The notes under the pieces were generated by a model. That model was not told the DNA's origin. It searched no databases and worked only from the letters and a program-made list of their open reading frames with translations. Made by a program: the position numbers and the translations under genes. A stretch of 63,968 nucleotides of DNA, counting the filler, from Octopus bimaculoides (Eukaryota), in the NCBI RefSeq assembly GCF_001194135.2. It is 6 parts of 6 records of this genome, joined end to end, with 100 filler letters (N's around TTAATTAATTAA, not from the genome) between each part and the next. Parts side by side here need not be neighbours in the genome. Positions count along the whole stretch, not along the records: positions 20,177 to 27,131 come from NC_068981.1; 5 more parts are not named here. One strand, given 5' to 3'. Shown here piece by piece: positions 19,811-27,246 of the stretch. Position 1 is the first letter of the stretch. The number at the start of each line of letters is the position of its first letter.

Positions 19811-20440
19811 ATTTCAGCACCTGACACACCTTCCAACCTGATCACTGCTCTTTGTTTTCCAGTCAGGCTCAAACTTTAATCACATGACCACAATAGTACC
19901 AACTATAAGTATGCACGCACAAAAGGCAGTGTGACAATAATAAAGATATGTCATAGCAAAAGGGCAGATAATTTTTGACTTTCCCTCATTTATTTACATA
20001 AGTAATACTAACATTACATTGCTATTATATATTTTCATACCAGCTTGCTTTGCTTCACTTTCATTTTGTATGTGACNNNNNNNNNNNNNNNNNNNNNNNN
20101 NNNNNNNNNNNNNNNNNNNNTTAATTAATTAANNNNNNNNNNNNNNNNNNNNNNNNNNNNNNNNNNNNNNNNNNNNTGTAGCTGGTCTTCTCTTGGAAGA
20201 GCCCTGCTTCTCACATGGACAACTGTATGTTGGCTGCTCAAGAGTGGGCAGCAAAAAATACCTATTTGTATATGCTCCACAAGGGAAAACAAGGAACATT
20301 GTTTACAACGAGGTGTTATAATCACAACAGCAAGAAAGTATGTACATGATCACCTTCTTTTACGAAACTTCATTGACTTTCATATATTTATATTGATATA
20401 CATATATATACGTGTGTTTGGGTGCGTGTGTGTATATACA

Positions 20441-20531
20441 TCTCTATATATAAAGATGATGCGTAGTCTAGACGGCGTTTTTAGATTTCATTATTCTCTT
20501 TAACCCGGGCAACGCCGGGTATTTCTGCTAG
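20441..20531 (+). mobile_element. Miniature non-autonomous Helitron (91 bp)
   Basis: 5' A|TCTCTATATATAAAG, subterminal hairpin ACCCGG-GCAACG-CCGGGT, 3' CTAG|T. Inserted between A and T without a TSD. Confidence 0.75.
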
Positions 20532-20879: not shown

Positions 20880-21288
20880 TTTTACTCTTTTTTACTTGTT
20901 TCAGTCTTTTGACTGTGGCCATGCTGGAGCACCGCCTTTAGTCGAGCAAATCGACCCCAGGACTTATTCTTTGGAAGCCTAGTACTTATTCTTTCGGTCT
21001 CTTTTGCTGAACCGCTAAGTTACGGGGACATAAACACACCAGCATCGGTTGTCAAGCGATGTTGGGGGGACAAACACAGACATACAAACACATACACACA
21101 TACATATATATATATACATATATACGACAGGCTTCTTTCAGTTTCCGTCTACCAAATCCACTCACAAGGCATTGGTCGGCCCGACGCTATAGTAGAAGGC
21201 ACTTGCCCAAGATGCCACGCAGTGGGACTGAACCCGGGACCATGTGGTTTGTAAGCAAGCTACTTACCACACAGCCACTCCTACGCCT
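20880..21288 (-). mobile_element. tRNA-derived SINE family A, full length
   Basis: On - strand: A-box TGGCTGTGTGG, B-box-like GGTTCAGTCCC, central gccttgtgagtggatttggtagacggaaactgaaagaagc, internal (TA/TG)n, tail gactgaaacaagtaaaa. Many copies in the window. Confidence 0.85.
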
Positions 21289-21757
21289 CTGTTTATTTTA
21301 CTTTTAGATCTTCTTCTAAACAGTATTGTGTTGTTTCATTTTTGGACGATTATTCAGAAAGCCGAGTTAATTTTTGTATTCTTTCTTCTTTCCTTTTTAA
21401 TTTTCAGTGAGAAATATGAAAATGAAACTAGCTTTTTTATGGGCTTTGTCCATAGCCCTATTTGCAAATGCGCAAGCAGATGAAACGTATTTATCAAACT
21501 TTTTATCACTTTTTCTTTTCCCTTAACACATTATTTCCATCTATCAAGTGCTAGTATTTGCGAATGATACTATTCTTTCAACATTCAACGTTCTAATATC
21601 TGGAACTTATAAATATCCATACAATACCTACTCATCTTAATTTTGTAGAAGTGCTTTAAATGTATGATTAAGGATAAATCAGTACAGTTCATGTTATCAA
21701 TCAACCAATATAAACTATGTTTTAGCAGACAATATCTACCCATTAATCTTAAAAGGT

Positions 21758-22922: not shown

Positions 22923-23337
22923 CAATGCAAGCATCATCAGCGTGGTAAAATTAATAATTAAATCATTCATTTTTTCTGCTGATTTCGGTCATAGCAAATC
23001 AGAAAAGTTACATTTAGTAGACGAACGTTTTCACTAGGTAAGAGATACTGCTCTCGACGCTGTATGATTTGGATTATTTGTTCAATTGTAGTTTTCTGTA
23101 GATCTTTATCTTTACTATTTTCACAAAATTCTACAACAGATCAAAAATAAATAAATAGATAAATGTATAAATATATGTTTTTGAGACTGTACACTACTTT
23201 CAATATTCTAAATAGATTTCTTATTTAGGCACAAGGTCAAAAATATTTGGTGAACGAATGCTAAATATATATCTATATGATGGATAGAAAGTAGCATAAA
23301 TATTTTGTGAACAATGATTGAATTCTTTTTATTGCAG

Positions 23338-23501
23338 AGATGAAGGGCACTATATGATTTTGGTCCCAAGAAATTTTGTTTTCGGCAAGGGTAACAACAT
23401 CAGTGTTACGATGTATAAAACTACAGAGGATGAAATATTAACGTTCGAAGTTTTTAAACAGAATGAAACTTATCTTACAGTTGAAACAACAGTTAATCCA
23501 G
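23338..23501 (+). CDS. Exon of an alpha-2-macroglobulin/TEP (CD109-like) gene, MG1 domain start
   Basis: ttttattgcAG acceptor and GTaaat donor. Encodes DEGHYMILVPRNFVFGKGNNISVTMYKTTEDEILTFEVFKQNETYLTVETTVNP; phase 2 in, phase 1 out. Confidence 0.7.
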
Positions 23502-23974
23502 GTAAATATAACTAAAATATATTGCGTTCATAATTTCATTGCCATTATATTTCAATAAAATATTAGAATAAATCTGTTTCATAAAAATGACTAAAGAGTG
23601 TTTTTGTAAAGAATCTGGAATAATGTGGAATATGTTCATCAACAGCTCCTCTTTATACGTGCTTCTGTACATATAGTTTTCAACTTCTCTGTTTTTGATA
23701 GTTTTTTAAAAAATTGTTAGGTTGTATTTTGAATAAGAACGTGAATTTTTTAATGGAGTTACATAGAGTGCTTTTTAGTGTACTCCTAGGTGATGTCATT
23801 TTGTAAATTCAGAGTACAAGAACTGCTTGGACATTCTTCTCTGTGGTATCCATTATGCATGTCCAATCCTATGTTTTGTAATGATTTGGATTCTCACGGA
23901 TTTCGCTGTGGACAATCTTTTCTTTTTAATGAGGCTTCACATGCTAACATAATTTATGTCGATATGCTGCCCAA

Positions 23975-24232: not shown

Positions 24233-25080
24233 TTGTTTTTAAGTAAAAATATAATACAATAAATACGACGCGCATACACACTCATACACACACACACACA
24301 CACGCATACACACACTTACAAATGTTTGTTTTTATGTTATATAAAGTCAAATGTTAATTGAAGTATCACCCAATAAATACAAATTAAGTAGCAATCAAAA
24401 GAAAGCTCTTTCACGTCATTTCTTCATGATAGTTTATTCTTCAGAGATGAAGCAATACCTCTGTTGAAAGGGGCGTAAATATCACAGAATCCCATCTGCA
24501 TCTTCTATATATTTATCACTGTGTAGTTAAGTGATAAATTAATGTATTTATCACAGTGAGTCAATAATCAAAGATAAGCTCTCAGTAACCTTAGTCTACG
24601 AGTTAGATTAGATTCCCGATTGATACTCTTTTCTTCTTTCATTCGCGAGAAATGATTCTTGAAAACAGTGAATATCACGAGTTTACATTAAGCATTAACT
24701 GATAACTTTAGACATTGAATTTATTCAGAAAATGTTTCCAGTCTTAATTTTAAATTGCTTAAGCTAAAAACTCTATGAGCCGAGTTGGTTTTATTTGATC
24801 ATTGAAGCTATATTTTTCCCACATACATGCATTTTACTTACGTTCTTGGAGAAAAAAAAAGAGAACAAACGGCATTATTAACAAGCATAAATATTATGTT
24901 TCATGCCTACTGATGGAAATAAACAGAAATTCACTCCTGTGTACTTTCCTTGTATATAAGTGTCAGTGTCAGCTGAAGCTGACTGGAAAAATAAATATTA
25001 TTGTATTGAAATGTCACATGAATAAAAGCATGATATGGAATGTGATCAAAATAATCTGTATGTGTTACTTCTATTTTCAG

Positions 25081-25103
25081 ATAGTTCTAAGTTCGTGGAA
25101 CTG
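25081..25103 (+). CDS. 23-nt micro-exon of the TEP/CD109-like gene
   Basis: ctattttcAG acceptor and GTaagt donor. Encodes (D)SSKFVEL; phase 1 in, phase 0 out, which exactly bridges the flanking exons. Confidence 0.6.
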
Positions 25104-25429
25104 GTAAGTTTATATGTTACTTCTATTTCTTCATACCGCTGCATTCCTTCTATTACTTAGCTTAACTTTTTTAAAATTGCATTTACTTTCTAAAAGCATT
25201 TGAATCAAAAATTATTTTTGTTTTAGCTACTTTTTAAATTTAAAATTAAAAAATTATTGTGGTTTAAAAACATTTATTTGTGAATTTAGCACTTTATAGT
25301 CCGATGTCCGATAAAACAAGTAACAACAATTAATTACCTAATCCCTTCATCTCATAAACTACAGGAAACAAAAAAAAAAAGGAAAAAATTCACTCTCTCA
25401 CCTTAATTTTGAGAACTGATCTCATTTTT

Positions 25430-25607
25430 CAGTTCTATATTTAAGAGATGAGGAATTATGTACATTATTTACATTATGTACATTTGACGGATATTTGTCC
25501 TCATCTTGCTTGTTAACACAACGTTTCGGCTGGTATACCCTCCAGCCTTCATCAGGTGTCTTGGAGAAATTTCGAACCTGGGTTCTCATTCTTAAGGTAT
25601 TTTTCGA

Positions 25608-25661
<54 letters not shown>
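25430..25661 (-). mobile_element. Hammerhead-bearing SINE-like element, inverted copy (tail plus (AAT)n; head presumably in the N-gap or absent)
   Basis: Reverse complement of 25897-26039 with ~5 differences, followed by (TAT)n. Confidence 0.8.
25515..25560 (-). ncRNA. Minimal type I hammerhead ribozyme motif
   Basis: GACAC-CUGAUGA-A-GGCUGG(agggtata)CCAGCC-GAAAC-GUU-GUGUU: intact core, 6-bp stem II, 5-bp stem I, palindromic ACGU stem III. Confidence 0.72.
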
Positions 25662-25722
25662 NNNNNNNNNNNNNNNNNNNNNNNNNNNNNNNNNNNNNNN
25701 NNNNNNNNNNCCATATACTCAC

Positions 25723-25799
25723 GGGCATATGGCGTAGTGGTTAAGAGCACAGGCTACTAATCCCAAGATTCCGAGTTCGATTCCAGGCAGTGACCTGAA

Positions 25800-25859
<60 letters not shown>

Positions 25860-26039
25860 TGATGATGATGATGATGATGATGAGGATGATGATGATGAAC
25901 ATCGAAAAAATACCTTGGGAATAAGAACCCAGGTTCGAAATTTCCCCAAGACACCTGATGAAGGCTGGAGGGTATATCAGCCGAAACGTTGTGTTAACAA
26001 CAAACAAGATGAGGACAAATATCCGTCAAATGTAAATAA
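25723..26039 (+). mobile_element. tRNA-headed SINE-like element: head, (AAT)n(GAT)n linker, hammerhead-bearing tail
   Basis: A-box TGGCGTAGTGG (~25730-25740), B-box GAGTTCGATTCC (25773-25784), microsatellite 25798-25897, tail with hammerhead motif. Confidence 0.8.
25950..25995 (+). ncRNA. Minimal type I hammerhead ribozyme motif, predicted cleavage after U25990
   Basis: GACAC-CUGAUGA-A-GGCUGG(agggtata)UCAGCC-GAAAC-GUU-GUGUU. Confidence 0.72.
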
Positions 26040-26085
26040 TGATCTCATTTTTGATAATTAATGAATTATTTTGCCTTTCTCATAG

Positions 26086-26266
26086 ATGCTGCCTTCTGAA
26101 CTAAAAGACCACTATTCAGTAAAGTTAAGAGTTACTGGAAGAGGCGCTGTTGGCTTTAATTCAACTACCTCTATATGGATATCTAAACAAGATGACGTAT
26201 ATACATTGAATACGCAGGCAATTCAGGCACAATTGGACAGGCCTTTCTACAGCAGCAACGAGTTGG
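26086..26266 (+). CDS. Exon of the TEP/CD109-like gene, MG1 end and MG2 start
   Basis: tttctcatAG acceptor and GTaagt donor. Encodes MLPSELKDHYSVKLRVTG...FNSTTSIWIS...AIQAQLDRPFYSSNEL; QLDRPFY matches the A2M-family QTDKPIY motif. Confidence 0.75.
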
Positions 26267-27246
26267 GTAAGTAACATTAAGTATTTCTATATTTAGATAT
26301 TGCTTGCAATTCTGGATAAAAAATGTCACTTTTGTTTCATATACAATAGAGAAGTCAGTTAACCTGACATAAATTGTAGATTTTTCTGAACCCCAAAAGG
26401 ACAAAAAAAAGAAAGGAAAAAAAGAAATTATCTTTAATTTTTTATGCTAAAGTCTGGTGCACATTCTGTCAGGTTGTTTTGCTGAACCTCTAAGTTACGG
26501 GGACTTAAACAAACCAACACTTGTTCTGATATTAGTGTACGCAGGCATCCCGACATCTGCATACACAAATATCAAAACAAGTCTAACATCACCACACATT
26601 TCCCACTCTCCTTTATCATTACCATTCCTTTCTTTCTTTCCATCACCTTCTACTCCTCCCCACGAAATACACACAGAACTATCCACATACCCCAATCAAC
26701 CTTTTCATAAATGAAAATTGGCAAACAACCTTCAGGTATACATTCGCTGTTTCCAACGTTAATACCATATCGCCTGAGGAAATGAACACATGAATATGAT
26801 CCACCCGATGTCCATGGACTATAATCATCCATCGAATACGGACTATGATCATAAGAAACATGTATTTTTTGGAAACGCGCATAGTGATGCTTTGAAATTT
26901 TAATTAACTCCATCCAAGGATTACTACTACTACTTTTATTACTATATTTATTCTACATTATATCGGTGCAGCTCAGTACAGCCCCATAAAACTGTTATTG
27001 CTAGTTGATATCATTAGGCAGTAGCCGGCATAATAAAATTGGGACTTTTATTTGCATACTGAAAAACGTTTCCCGTAAACGAACTTAAAGGACTACATAC
27101 ATACATACATAGATACATACATATATATATANNNNNNNNNNNNNNNNNNNNNNNNNNNNNNNNNNNNNNNNNNNNTTAATTAATTAANNNNNNNNNNNNN
27201 NNNNNNNNNNNNNNNNNNNNNNNNNNNNNNNGTGTGTGTGTGAACT

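What the first reader, a model, noticed from the sequence alone, without database searches (positions are those of the whole stretch)
25417..26052. tRNA-headed SINE-like element carrying a hammerhead ribozyme, inserted as an inverted pair with a 13-bp direct repeat
Seen: a Pol III-type head (A-box TGGCGTAGTGG, B-box GAGTTCGATTCC), an (AAT)n(GAT)n linker, and a ~140-bp tail with a full type I hammerhead core: GACAC/CUGAUGA/A/GGCUGG-loop-(U/C)CAGCC/GAAAC/GUU/GUGUU. A second tail copy lies upstream in inverted orientation. The only difference inside the motif is G.U versus G-C in stem II, which keeps the pairing. The composite 25430-26039 is flanked by tgatctcattttt (25417-25429 and 26040-26052). 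Known: minimal hammerheads with palindromic stem III occur in Penelope-like element LTRs and cleave mainly as dimers; PLEs make inverted repeats; Schistosoma Sm-alpha combines a tRNA-derived head with a hammerhead. Inference: a Pol III-transcribed, self-cleaving non-autonomous retroelement borrowing PLE machinery, which I do not recall being described for cephalopods.
Basis: partly seen in the sequence, partly recalled or inferred. Interest (0 to 1): 0.9.

Follow-up and report, generated by a model that had tools for sequence, protein, structure and literature searches.

The report
Octopus SINE with Penelope-type hammerhead tail
This is a real, fairly recent insertion of a short non-coding mobile element in an octopus intron, joining a tRNA-like promoter head to a tail that carries the minimal hammerhead ribozyme typical of Penelope-like retrotransposons, and its inverted-pair layout suggests that Penelope enzymes can copy such small elements.

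Summary

- **One insertion:** Contigs of a related species cover the same intron and exon. They lack 25430-26039 and carry the 13-mer once, so the whole inverted composite is one insertion with a true 13-bp target-site duplication.
[quoted passage not shown] - **Family:** About 45 of 149 ORF clusters are octopus-type copies; most of the rest are a related family that forms 129-nt tandem arrays. Head and tail are linked in two further loci and one annotated Octopus bimaculoides protein.
- **PLE signature:** An inverted 5'-truncated copy abuts a full copy in three TSD-flanked composites. A conserved 27-nt terminal extension sits only on the inverted arm.
- **Not shown:** Pol III transcription, self-cleavage and the autonomous partner in octopus. 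Rfam and ARAGORN recognise neither the head nor the ribozyme. Seven copies in the relative all have broken cores.

Best reading: a tRNA-derived SINE mobilised in trans by a PLE, a new variant of known kinds.

The parts
25417..25429 (.). Left copy of the 13-bp target-site duplication TGATCTCATTTTT
   Evidence: Exact direct repeat (D16). The related species has it once at the empty site, L001 1110-1122.
25430..25456 (-). 27-nt terminal extension (sense ATTCCTCATCTCTTAAATATAGAACTG), present only on the inverted arm
   Evidence: Alignment of copies. It is present on the inverted arms of the window, L007 and L132 and absent from their direct partners. It is conserved in O. bimaculoides P0001 (...NSSSLKYRT). 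It matches the PLE 'extension at one end' described in PMC8557442.
25457..25483 (-). Three 9-nt repeats (ATGTAMATA) near the 3' end of the inverted arm
   Evidence: Direct copies end inside this repeat.
25430..25609 (-). Inverted tail copy, 5'-truncated relative to a full element as far as the sequence can be read
   Evidence: 95.4% identical to the right tail over 130 nt.
25515..25560 (-). Minimal type I hammerhead, left copy. Predicted cut between 25520 and 25519 on the minus strand
   Evidence: Descriptor hit and core pattern.
25610..25661 (-). (ATT)n, the reverse complement of the (AAT)n linker of the inverted copy, running into the gap
   Evidence: I2-I8.
25662..25710 (.). Assembly gap (N) inside the insertion. 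It hides the junction between the inverted arm and the 5' leader
   Evidence: Order and orientation across the gap are supported by the collinear empty site. In ungapped relatives (L007, L132) the inverted fragment abuts the leader directly.
25711..25722 (+). 5' leader ccatatactcac of the full-length copy
   Evidence: Similar leader CCATAATTACCGAA before GGGCATATGGCG in L007.
25723..25797 (+). tRNA-like head with A box 25730-25740 and B box 25773-25784. The T8-G53 spacing is 45 nt, as in a tRNA
   Evidence: Pattern unique, 0.00 expected. The same head is present in L132 at 1494-1560 and partly in L007. Not recognised as a tRNA by ARAGORN or Rfam.
25798..25899 (+). A-rich microsatellite linker (AAT)n(GAT)n
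   Evidence: Linker remnants are present in L009, L131, L132 and L133.
25900..26039 (+). Direct tail copy. It ends within the first ATGTAAATA unit and lacks the terminal extension
25950..25995 (+). Minimal type I hammerhead, right copy: helix I 5 bp, unpaired A25962, helix II 6 bp, no helix III (ACGU palindrome). Predicted cut after U25990
   Evidence: Features compared with PMC4209133.
26040..26052 (.). Right copy of the TSD. Its T5 (26048-26052) is the first T run of 4 or more after the direct copy, a possible Pol III terminator

Best explanation
The composite is one retrotransposition product of a non-autonomous, tRNA-derived SINE of octopods.

Anatomy of a full element: a 5' leader; a tRNA-like head with A and B boxes; an (AAT)n(GAT)n linker; a tail of about 140 nt with a PLE-type minimal hammerhead; (ATGTAMATA)n repeats; and a 27-nt terminal segment.

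Inferred mechanism:
1. RNA polymerase III starts just upstream of the head and runs to the first T run in the flank. In this copy that is the T5 of the right TSD.
2. The tail imitates the terminal-repeat module of a Penelope-like element, so that element's reverse transcriptase and GIY-YIG endonuclease act on the SINE RNA in trans.
3. The endonuclease nicks the two target strands 13 bp apart, and both 3'-OH ends prime cDNA synthesis.
4. One primer starts at the extreme 3' end and aborts early. This gives the inverted, 5'-truncated arm that carries the terminal segment.
5. The other primer starts inside the 9-nt repeats and reaches the head, giving the full direct copy.
6. Joining and fill-in produce the 13-bp TSD.

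The hammerhead lacks helix III, so a single RNA should stay uncut and remain a full-length template. Cleavage after U25990 would need two tails paired through the ACGU/AACGUU palindrome.

Shown here: the anatomy, the single-event insertion, the recurrence of the layout, and the family. Inferred: Pol III transcription, the PLE partner, dual priming and catalysis.
For: Single event:
- Empty orthologous site with one copy of the 13-mer.
- Two further composites (inverted 3' fragment, then head, linker and tail) are flanked by their own direct repeats: L007 ATACA(CG)ATAAATAGTA and L132 GT(GA)AGAAACA (read).

Family and head-tail linkage:
- 149 ORF clusters match the tail profile, about 45 of them octopus-type.
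- Head plus tail occur together in L132 and L007 and in O. bimaculoides XP_052825882.1.
- 5'-truncated single copies exist (L136).

PLE signature:
- The inverted arm varies in length: 45, 78, 108 and at least 232 nt.
- The terminal segment sits only on the inverted arm in all three head-bearing composites.
- This matches the published PLE layout: an inverted 5'-truncated copy at the 5' end, a 30-40 bp extension at one end, and assembly trouble (PMC8557442).
- 'Dual min-HHRs 100-700 bp apart on opposite strands' are reported for S. mansoni (PMC4209133).

Hammerhead:
- It occurs far above chance.
- A minimal hammerhead with the same ACAC-CUGAUGA-A...C-GAAACGUU-GUGU frame lies upstream of a GIY-YIG ORF in L040. 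Hammerheads also flank RVT_1 and GIY-YIG ORFs in L082.
- A related family (L010) forms a 129-nt tandem array with an inverted truncated unit at one end, and 14 of 99 ORFs of that family read across an inverted junction.

Pol III compatibility: the sense strands have no run of four or more T but do have A5 and A6 runs.
Against: - No octopus PLE was available, so identity between the tail and a PLE terminal repeat is untested.
- The only RT gene next to a relative (L010) belongs to an APE-type LINE, not a PLE.
- A 3' end made of short tandem repeats is also typical of SINEs that depend on CR1/RTE-type LINEs, which are abundant in octopus.
- The head is not recognised as a tRNA by ARAGORN or Rfam. 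Only at a 70% threshold does ARAGORN return an implausible fold.
- No Rfam hammerhead model matches.
- All seven copies in the related species have core mutations. The core (81.8% kept) is only slightly better conserved than the flanks (70.9% and 77.4%).
- The helix II W/R...Q/R counts in the related family fit neutral CpG decay, not covariation.
- PLE minimal hammerheads cleave poorly in vitro.
- Absence of T4 in about 560 nt is not statistically compelling.
Confidence: 0.7

Rival explanations
1. This is an ordinary LINE-dependent tRNA SINE with a CR1, RTE or Dong-type partner. The inverted arm comes from twin priming, and the hammerhead-like tail is an inherited relic with no link to Penelope enzymes.
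For: Direct copies end in short tandem repeats (ATGTAAATA)n, as in stringent LINE/SINE pairs. LINEs and SINEs are the most abundant octopus TE orders. An APE-LINE lies near a related array in L010. 5' truncation and TSDs of 7-17 bp fit any target-primed reverse transcription.
Against: Classical twin priming copies non-overlapping parts of one RNA (my own knowledge of L1 twin priming, not checked here). In this composite both arms cover the same tail of about 135 nt. Twin priming does not explain a conserved 27-nt segment found only on the inverted arm in 3 of 3 head-bearing composites. The minimal helix-III-less hammerhead with the position 9/10.1 insertion has so far been reported for PLEs and Terminons, not LINEs. 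The same frame was found here in a GIY-YIG element.
Confidence: 0.16
2. This is a chance neighbourhood. A pair of truncated Penelope terminal-repeat fragments happens to lie beside an unrelated tRNA-derived SINE or tRNA pseudogene.
For: Cervera & de la Pena interpreted most dispersed minimal hammerheads as truncated PLEs, some in opposite-strand pairs.
Against: The whole block is absent from the empty site and is bounded by one TSD. The same head-linker-tail order recurs in L132, in L007 and in the ORF of P0014.
Confidence: 0.04
3. This is a foldback or MITE-type DNA transposon whose terminal inverted repeats happen to contain the hammerhead motif.
For: Inverted arms of about 95% identity flanked by a direct repeat.
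Against: Arm length differs in every locus (45, 78, 108 and at least 232 nt) and the ends are asymmetric. Single 5'-truncated copies exist (L136). TSD length varies between about 7 and 17 bp. The internal Pol III head and the A-rich linker are polar features of a retroposon.
Confidence: 0.04
4. This is an assembly artefact: a palindromic chimera or a misjoin at the N gap.
For: A gap sits at the centre of the inverted structure, and PLE-type structures are known to trouble assemblies.
Against: The arms differ by 6 substitutions, two indels and about 45 nt at the 3' end, so neither is a mechanical copy of the other. Both outer junctions are collinear with the related species. The same layout occurs in ungapped contigs from independent runs.
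Confidence: 0.02

Closest known systems
Sm-alpha / Sj-alpha SINE-like elements of Schistosoma (Ferbeyre et al. 1998; Laha et al. 2000; summarised in PMC6765202)
   Same: A short non-coding retroposon that combines a Pol III-type promoter with a type I hammerhead. It is dispersed in many copies.
   Different: As far as I recall, the schistosome ribozyme is a canonical type I hammerhead with loop-loop contacts and a short capped helix III, and it is efficient in vitro. The elements are often tandem, with cleavage thought to release units. The octopus element has the helix-III-less minimal variant, a microsatellite linker, an open helix I, and inverted rather than tandem composites.
Minimal hammerheads in the pseudo-LTRs of Penelope-like elements (Cervera & de la Pena 2014, PMC4209133)
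   Same: Same ribozyme architecture in every described detail. Also the same genomic habit: mostly single copies, with some opposite-strand pairs 100-700 bp apart.
   Different: Those motifs were assigned to full or truncated PLEs. Here the motif is the tail of an element with its own tRNA-like Pol III head and no PLE coding sequence.
PLE insertion architecture (Evgen'ev & Arkhipova 2005; Craig et al. 2021, PMC8557442)
   Same: An inverted 5'-truncated copy at the 5' end of a full copy, a short extension at one end only, a TSD around the whole unit, and assembly gaps.
   Different: The element has no RT or GIY-YIG ORF and no partial tandem (pLTR) in the window copy. The unit is under 0.7 kb.
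Animal non-LTR retrozymes (Cervera & de la Pena 2020, PMC7229834; Li et al. 2026 preprint 10.64898/2026.07.22.740005)
   Same: Non-autonomous, hammerhead-bearing and proposed to depend on PLEs. The related 129-nt tandem family in L010 looks like this kind.
   Different: Retrozymes are tandem arrays of 170-400 nt units with canonical type I hammerheads that give circular RNAs. They have no tRNA-like head. The window element is dispersed, not tandem.
LINE-dependent tRNA SINEs that share the partner's 3' tail (the UnaSINE1/UnaL2 paradigm; octopus OK/OR SINEs of Ohshima & Okada 1994, recalled from memory and not read)
   Same: tRNA-derived head, unrelated body, 3' tail presumed to be copied from the autonomous partner, 5' truncation and TSDs.
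   Different: The presumed partner is a PLE rather than a LINE, and the tail contains a ribozyme motif. Whether this family equals one of the 1994 octopus SINEs could not be checked.

Membership tests
PLE-type minimal hammerhead ribozyme (type I, min-HHR) | Catalytic boxes CUGANGA and GAAA with H17 not G | tested here: met
   CUGAUGA at 25955-25961, GAAA at 25983-25986 and U17 at 25990. The inverted copy is identical.
PLE-type minimal hammerhead ribozyme (type I, min-HHR) | [quoted passage not shown] | tested here: met
   A25962. The feature is listed in PMC4209133. All descriptor hits in other loci also have it.
PLE-type minimal hammerhead ribozyme (type I, min-HHR) | G10.1-C11.1 pair, long helix II (6-8 bp) and short open helix I (4-5 bp) | tested here: met
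   G25963-C25982. Helix II is 6 bp (GGCUGG with U/CCAGCC). Helix I is 5 bp (GACAC/GUGUU).
PLE-type minimal hammerhead ribozyme (type I, min-HHR) | Helix III absent or 1-2 bp, with palindromic 15.2-16.2, so that only a dimer can form helix III | tested here: met
   A15.1 C15.2 G16.2 U16.1 are contiguous (ACGU, within the palindrome AACGUU) at 25986-25989.
PLE-type minimal hammerhead ribozyme (type I, min-HHR) | Self-cleavage, as a dimer | not testable with these tools
   Needs transcription and cleavage assays. The dimer topology is a pseudoknot in concatenated notation and could not be scored.
PLE-type minimal hammerhead ribozyme (type I, min-HHR) | Structure supported by covariation across copies | tested here: inconclusive
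   Helix II U-A in the octopus family against C-G in the related family is a compensatory difference. Within the related family, however, the four codon combinations fit independent CpG decay. The decayed copies show no compensatory changes.
Rfam hammerhead families (type I, II, III, HH9, HH10) | Score at or near the gathering threshold of a hammerhead covariance model | tested here: not met
   No hammerhead hit even at E<=10 on a 181-nt slice. This is as expected, because these models require helix III.
tRNA-derived SINE | Internal Pol III promoter: A and B boxes at tRNA-like spacing | tested here: met
   TGGCGTAGTGG, then 32 nt, then GAGTTCGATTCC. The pattern is unique with 0.00 expected. 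T8-G53 spacing is 45 nt.
tRNA-derived SINE | Recognisable tRNA cloverleaf or tRNA homology of the head | tested here: inconclusive
   ARAGORN and the Rfam tRNA model find nothing. At a 70% threshold ARAGORN returns an implausible tRNA-Leu fold. Resemblance of the 3' half to tRNA-Arg is only recalled from memory.
tRNA-derived SINE | Short, non-coding, dispersed in many copies with 5' truncation and TSDs | tested here: met
   About 45 ORF clusters and 7 loci in a related species. TSD and empty site. Truncated copies L133 and L136.
tRNA-derived SINE | 3' tail shared with an autonomous partner in the same genome | not testable with these tools
   No octopus genome or PLE sequence could be searched. 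The only DNA request for O. bimaculoides returned none.
tRNA-derived SINE | Transcription by RNA polymerase III | not testable with these tools
   Compatibility only: there is no run of four or more T on the sense strand, and a T5 follows in the flank.
Element integrated by Penelope-like (RT + GIY-YIG) machinery | Inverted 5'-truncated copy adjacent to the 5' end of a fuller copy, as one TSD-flanked unit | tested here: met
   Window, L007 and L132. L005 and L133 are inverted pairs without a head.
Element integrated by Penelope-like (RT + GIY-YIG) machinery | Short (30-40 bp) extension present at one end of the unit only | tested here: met
   The 27-nt segment (36-45 nt with the extra 9-mers) is on the inverted arm only in 3 of 3 head-bearing composites. 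Criterion from PMC8557442.
Element integrated by Penelope-like (RT + GIY-YIG) machinery | Hammerhead of this type physically associated with RT/GIY-YIG ORFs | tested here: met
   Met in other animals' contigs only: L040 (GIY-YIG) and L082 (RVT_1 + GIY-YIG). Not shown for octopus.
Non-LTR retrozyme | Tandem array of hammerhead-bearing units able to give unit-length circular RNA | tested here: not met
   The window has one sense hammerhead per strand and no tandem. The related family in L010 does form a 129-nt x 2.8 array.

The most novel reading that the evidence does not exclude
SINEs are textbook parasites of LINEs. This family would be a SINE that parasitises Penelope-like elements. Its palindromic, helix-III-less hammerhead may act mainly as an RNA-RNA pairing device. 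Two tails paired through AACGUU would present two templates to the two nicked target strands. That would explain why PLE-type insertions are so often inverted or tandem pairs. As a by-product, each such insertion places a ready-made hairpin with arms of about 210 nt in host transcripts. Here the hairpin lies 46 nt upstream of an exon, a possible substrate for the heavy A-to-I editing of coleoids.
Probability: 0.2. Interest if true: 0.8.

Novelty: new variant of a known kind. Interest (0 to 1): 0.62.

Why it matters
- **PLE biology:** How PLEs integrate, and what their hammerheads do, are open questions. A 0.4-kb Pol III-driven passenger that reproduces the PLE insertion signature would be a compact reporter for that mechanism. 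The signature is the inverted truncated arm, the one-sided extension and the TSD.
- **SINE definition:** A PLE partner would widen the definition of SINE partners beyond LINEs.
- **Octopus genomes:** SINEs make up about 12% of the Octopus vulgaris genome, and about 900 families are unclassified. Recognising a PLE-dependent class would help annotate them.
- **Host effects:** Each insertion creates intronic hairpins that may affect splicing or RNA editing.

Tried and rejected
- **Rfam:** scans of the whole piece and of narrow slices gave only low-complexity noise (mir-297, SCARNA7) and no hammerhead or tRNA hit.
- **ARAGORN:** default and relaxed runs gave no credible tRNA.
- **Protein search:** a concatenated six-frame query of head and tail found nothing.
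- **Metagenome scans:** a family-specific hammerhead pattern had 0 hits in the metagenome collection. A looser pattern returned mostly unrelated contigs, useful only after filtering with the descriptor.
- **O. bimaculoides DNA:** none could be fetched for P0001 or P0014 (gene range too long).
- **L010 neighbour:** the RT ORF beside the related array is an APE-type LINE, not a PLE.
- **Spurious profile hits:** P0009, P0039, P0071 and P0092.
- **Helix II test:** the covariation test on codon pairs is consistent with neutral CpG decay.
- **Dimer energy:** it could not be evaluated, because the double hammerhead is not nested.
- **Snap-back synthesis:** rejected as the source of the inverted arm. 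It would duplicate the head, whereas the inverted arms contain the 3' end.
- **Head-like hits in L061:** they are another SINE, not linked to the hammerhead pairs there.
- **Host gene:** Pfam gave no name for it.
- **Papers not held:** Lunse et al. 2017 could not be read.
Full report
**1. What is in the sequence**

Reading left to right, the region contains:
- TGATCTCATTTTT at 25417-25429.
- An inverted tail at 25430-25609 (minus strand).
- (ATT)n at 25610-25661.
- An N gap at 25662-25710.
- A 12-nt leader at 25711-25722.
- A tRNA-like head at 25723-25797, with A box TGGCGTAGTGG (25730-25740) and B box GAGTTCGATTCC (25773-25784).
- A linker (AAT)n(GAT)n at 25798-25899.
- A direct tail at 25900-26039.
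- TGATCTCATTTTT again at 26040-26052.

The 13-mer is an exact direct repeat (D16). The A/B-box pattern occurs once in the window with 0.00 expected. The distance from T8 to G53 is 45 nt, as in a tRNA.

The tails align over about 130 nt with 6 substitutions, all transitions, and two small indels (95.4% identity).

**2. The hammerhead**

Each tail contains GACAC-CUGAUGA-A-GGCUGG-AGGGUAUA-(U/C)CAGCC-GAAA-CGU-U|GUGUU. The sites are 25950-25995 on the plus strand and 25515-25560 on the minus strand.
- The only difference between the two is G.U versus G-C at the last pair of helix II.
- The simple core pattern is found twice, against 0.04 expected.
- A structural descriptor requiring helix I, an optional bulge, helix II, GAAA and H17 finds exactly these two sites. 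It gives 0.002 hits per random piece of the same composition, and none in 3000 random pieces at the observed stem lengths.
- The predicted cut is after U25990. On the minus strand it falls between 25520 and 25519.
- Rfam has no matching model even at E<=10. This is expected, because helix III is missing: A15.1, C15.2, G16.2 and U16.1 are contiguous (ACGU, inside the palindrome AACGUU).

This is the 'min-HHR' that Cervera & de la Pena (2014) described for Penelope-like elements. Their features are:
- helix I of 4-5 bp;
- a long helix II;
- a conserved G10.1-C11.1 pair;
- palindromic 15.2-16.2;
- activity expected only as a dimer, and low in vitro.

All of the sequence features are met here.

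**3. The gap and the insertion**

The exon at 26086-26268 led, through a Logan ORF (P0002), to four contigs (L001-L004) from sequencing runs of a related species.
- L001 1-1122 aligns to window 24297-25429 at 82% identity.
- L001 1110-2042 aligns to window 26040-26976 at 77% identity.
- The 13 bases L001 1110-1122 (TGATCTTATTTTT) align to both copies of the repeat.

The relative therefore has the empty site. Everything between 25430 and 26039, including whatever the gap hides, is one insertion, and the 13-mer is a genuine target-site duplication. This also settles order and orientation across the gap. The length and content of the gap remain unknown.

The arms differ from each other, so neither is an assembly copy of the other.

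**4. A family, with head and tail linked**

The tail is open in one frame.
- A word-indexed search found one annotated O. bimaculoides 'protein' that is a translated copy (P0001).
- A profile search of 1.84 billion representatives found 149 clusters.
- About 45 of these are octopus-type (MRTQVRNFPKTPDEGWRVYQPKRCVNNKQDEDKYPSNVNN...). Most of the rest are a second family (...RQTPEEGRRTYRPKRCGNNNKDEDNSPKTLNDKNHQASSQKFRQ), often in tandem.

DNA for several copies was fetched from the same runs that gave the empty site:

| Locus | Content |
|---|---|
| L132 | 45-nt inverted fragment of the tail's 3' end, then head, short linker and tail |
| L007 | 78-nt inverted 3' fragment, the leader and start of the head (GGGCATATGGCG, the rest deleted), a degenerate linker and the tail |
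| L005 | Inverted pair of tails without a head |
| L133 | Inverted pair truncated in the linker |
| L009, L131, L136 | Single copies, or copies cut by the contig end |

An annotated O. bimaculoides isoform (XP_052825882.1) starts with a translated A-box-to-tail fusion.

So head and tail are linked in independent copies, and 5' truncation is common.

L007 and L132 have their own flanking direct repeats, ATACA(CG)ATAAATAGTA and GT(GA)AGAAACA. I read these.

**5. The asymmetry that points to Penelope**

Aligning all copies shows a rule.
- In the three composites that contain a head (window, L007, L132), the direct copy ends inside the 9-nt repeats (ATGTAAATA)n.
- The inverted arm carries a further conserved segment, ATTCCTCATCTCTTAAATATAGAAC(TG).
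- The inverted arm has a different length in each locus: 45, 78, 108 and at least 232 nt.

Craig et al. [quoted passage not shown] Cervera & de la Pena noted dual min-HHRs 100-700 bp apart on opposite strands.

Snap-back synthesis would duplicate the head, not the 3' end. Classical twin priming copies non-overlapping parts of one RNA (my own knowledge). Neither fits.

Priming of cDNA from both nicked target strands fits all loci. One cDNA starts at the extreme 3' end and aborts. The other starts in the 9-mer repeats, with 2 nt of microhomology (TG) at 26040-26041, and reaches the head.

**6. Direct link of this hammerhead type to PLE genes**

No octopus PLE could be searched. A pattern scan of metagenome contigs, which include animal host DNA, was filtered with the descriptor. 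It returned many minimal hammerheads, all with the one-nucleotide bulge.
- In L040 the motif ACAC-CUGAUGA-A-GCCC...GGGC-GAAACGUU-GUGU lies about 200 nt upstream of two long ORFs. The second ORF ends in a GIY-YIG domain.
- L082 has hammerheads flanking RVT_1 and GIY-YIG ORFs.
- L061 has two inverted pairs with a hammerhead in each arm.
- The related family in L010 is a 129-nt x 2.8 tandem array preceded by an inverted truncated unit. 14 of 99 ORFs of that family read across an inverted junction. The RT gene near that array is, however, an APE-type LINE.

**7. What is not shown**

- **Transcription:** Pol III transcription is inferred from the boxes and from strand asymmetry. The sense strands have no run of four or more T, they do have A5 and A6 runs, and a T5 follows in the right TSD. 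This is not statistically strong.
- **tRNA origin:** the head is not detected as a tRNA.
- **Catalysis:** untested.
- **Conservation:** in seven copies from the relative, every core is mutated. Identity to the window copy is 81.8% for the core, 82.9% and 85.7% for helices I and II, and 70.9% and 77.4% for the flanks. That is only a slight excess, as expected for dead copies decaying neutrally.
- **Covariation:** the U-A versus C-G difference in helix II between the two families is compensatory. Within the related family the codon combinations fit independent CpG decay.

**8. Comparison with known systems, and novelty**

- The closest known element is the schistosome Sm-alpha/Sj-alpha SINE-like family. 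To my recollection it has a canonical hammerhead and tandem habit.
- The ribozyme and the insertion layout are those of PLEs.
- Animal retrozymes have recently been proposed as non-autonomous PLE derivatives, but they are tandem and headless.
- Recent octopus repeat surveys list about 900 unclassified SINE families and active Penelope families and do not mention ribozymes.
- I found no paper describing a tRNA-headed SINE with a PLE tail in cephalopods or elsewhere.
- Repbase/Dfam and the 1994 octopus SINE paper could not be consulted.

I rate it a new variant of known kinds, of solid interest to transposon and ribozyme specialists.

**9. Context**

The insertion lies in an intron of a plus-strand gene, with its right end 46 nt upstream of the acceptor at 26085/26086. 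The direct copy is sense to the gene. In the pre-mRNA the two arms would pair into a long hairpin.

Noticed in passing
window 20893-21290 (minus strand) and fragment 26440-26530: A different and apparently older tRNA-derived SINE family. It has an A box in GGCTGTGTGGTAAG, a B box GGGTTCAGTCCC, an internal TG/TA microsatellite, and a long tail ending ...GGCGGTGCTCCAGCATGGCCACAGTC. The 26450-26519 fragment lies in the region shared with the related species. The same tail motif appears at the end of L005.
   Followed up: partly
P0014 = XP_052825882.1, Octopus bimaculoides 'dystrobrevin beta isoform X1' (94 aa): The first 33 or so residues (MPMGIWHSGEGWRVYQPKCCVNNKQDEDKYPS) are a translated copy of this SINE, with the A-box region fused to hammerhead helix II and the tail. 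This is either exonisation of a SINE copy or a gene-model artefact.
   Followed up: partly
L010 10080-10530 (ENA ERZ21867824, contig ctg122172l) and about 100 ORF clusters: A related hammerhead family forms 129-nt tandem arrays with an inverted truncated unit at one end. It resembles a very short retrozyme. The host organism is unknown. Many ORFs start MANGIRTGDPRGF..., which may encode the reverse complement of a tRNA 3' end (GGATTCGAACC).
   Followed up: partly
window 25430-25661 versus 25798-26012, relative to the exon at 26086-26268: The inverted arms would form a hairpin with arms of about 210 nt in the pre-mRNA, 46 nt upstream of the 3' splice site, with a sense-strand hammerhead 95 nt upstream of it. 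All six arm differences are transitions, four of them A/G. The number is too small to call an editing footprint.
   Followed up: no
window 23337-23515 and 26086-26268 (plus strand): Two apparent coding exons of an unidentified host gene. Pfam gave no significant family, and the only relative found was an ORF on the orthologous Logan contigs at 72% identity. My first impression of a macroglobulin-type domain was not supported.
   Followed up: partly
L061 1130-1412 and 5598-5966; L017 5694-5999: Contigs in metagenome collections that are probably animal host DNA carry inverted pairs of 140-145 nt arms, each arm with a minimal hammerhead (ACAUGU-type palindrome). The opposite-strand pair therefore appears to be a general footprint of these elements.
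   Followed up: partly
window 20382-20454, 24236-24424 and others: The Rfam sub-threshold hits to mir-297, SCARNA7, mir-3149 and similar families all fall on TA/TG/CA microsatellites and are low-complexity noise.
   Followed up: yes
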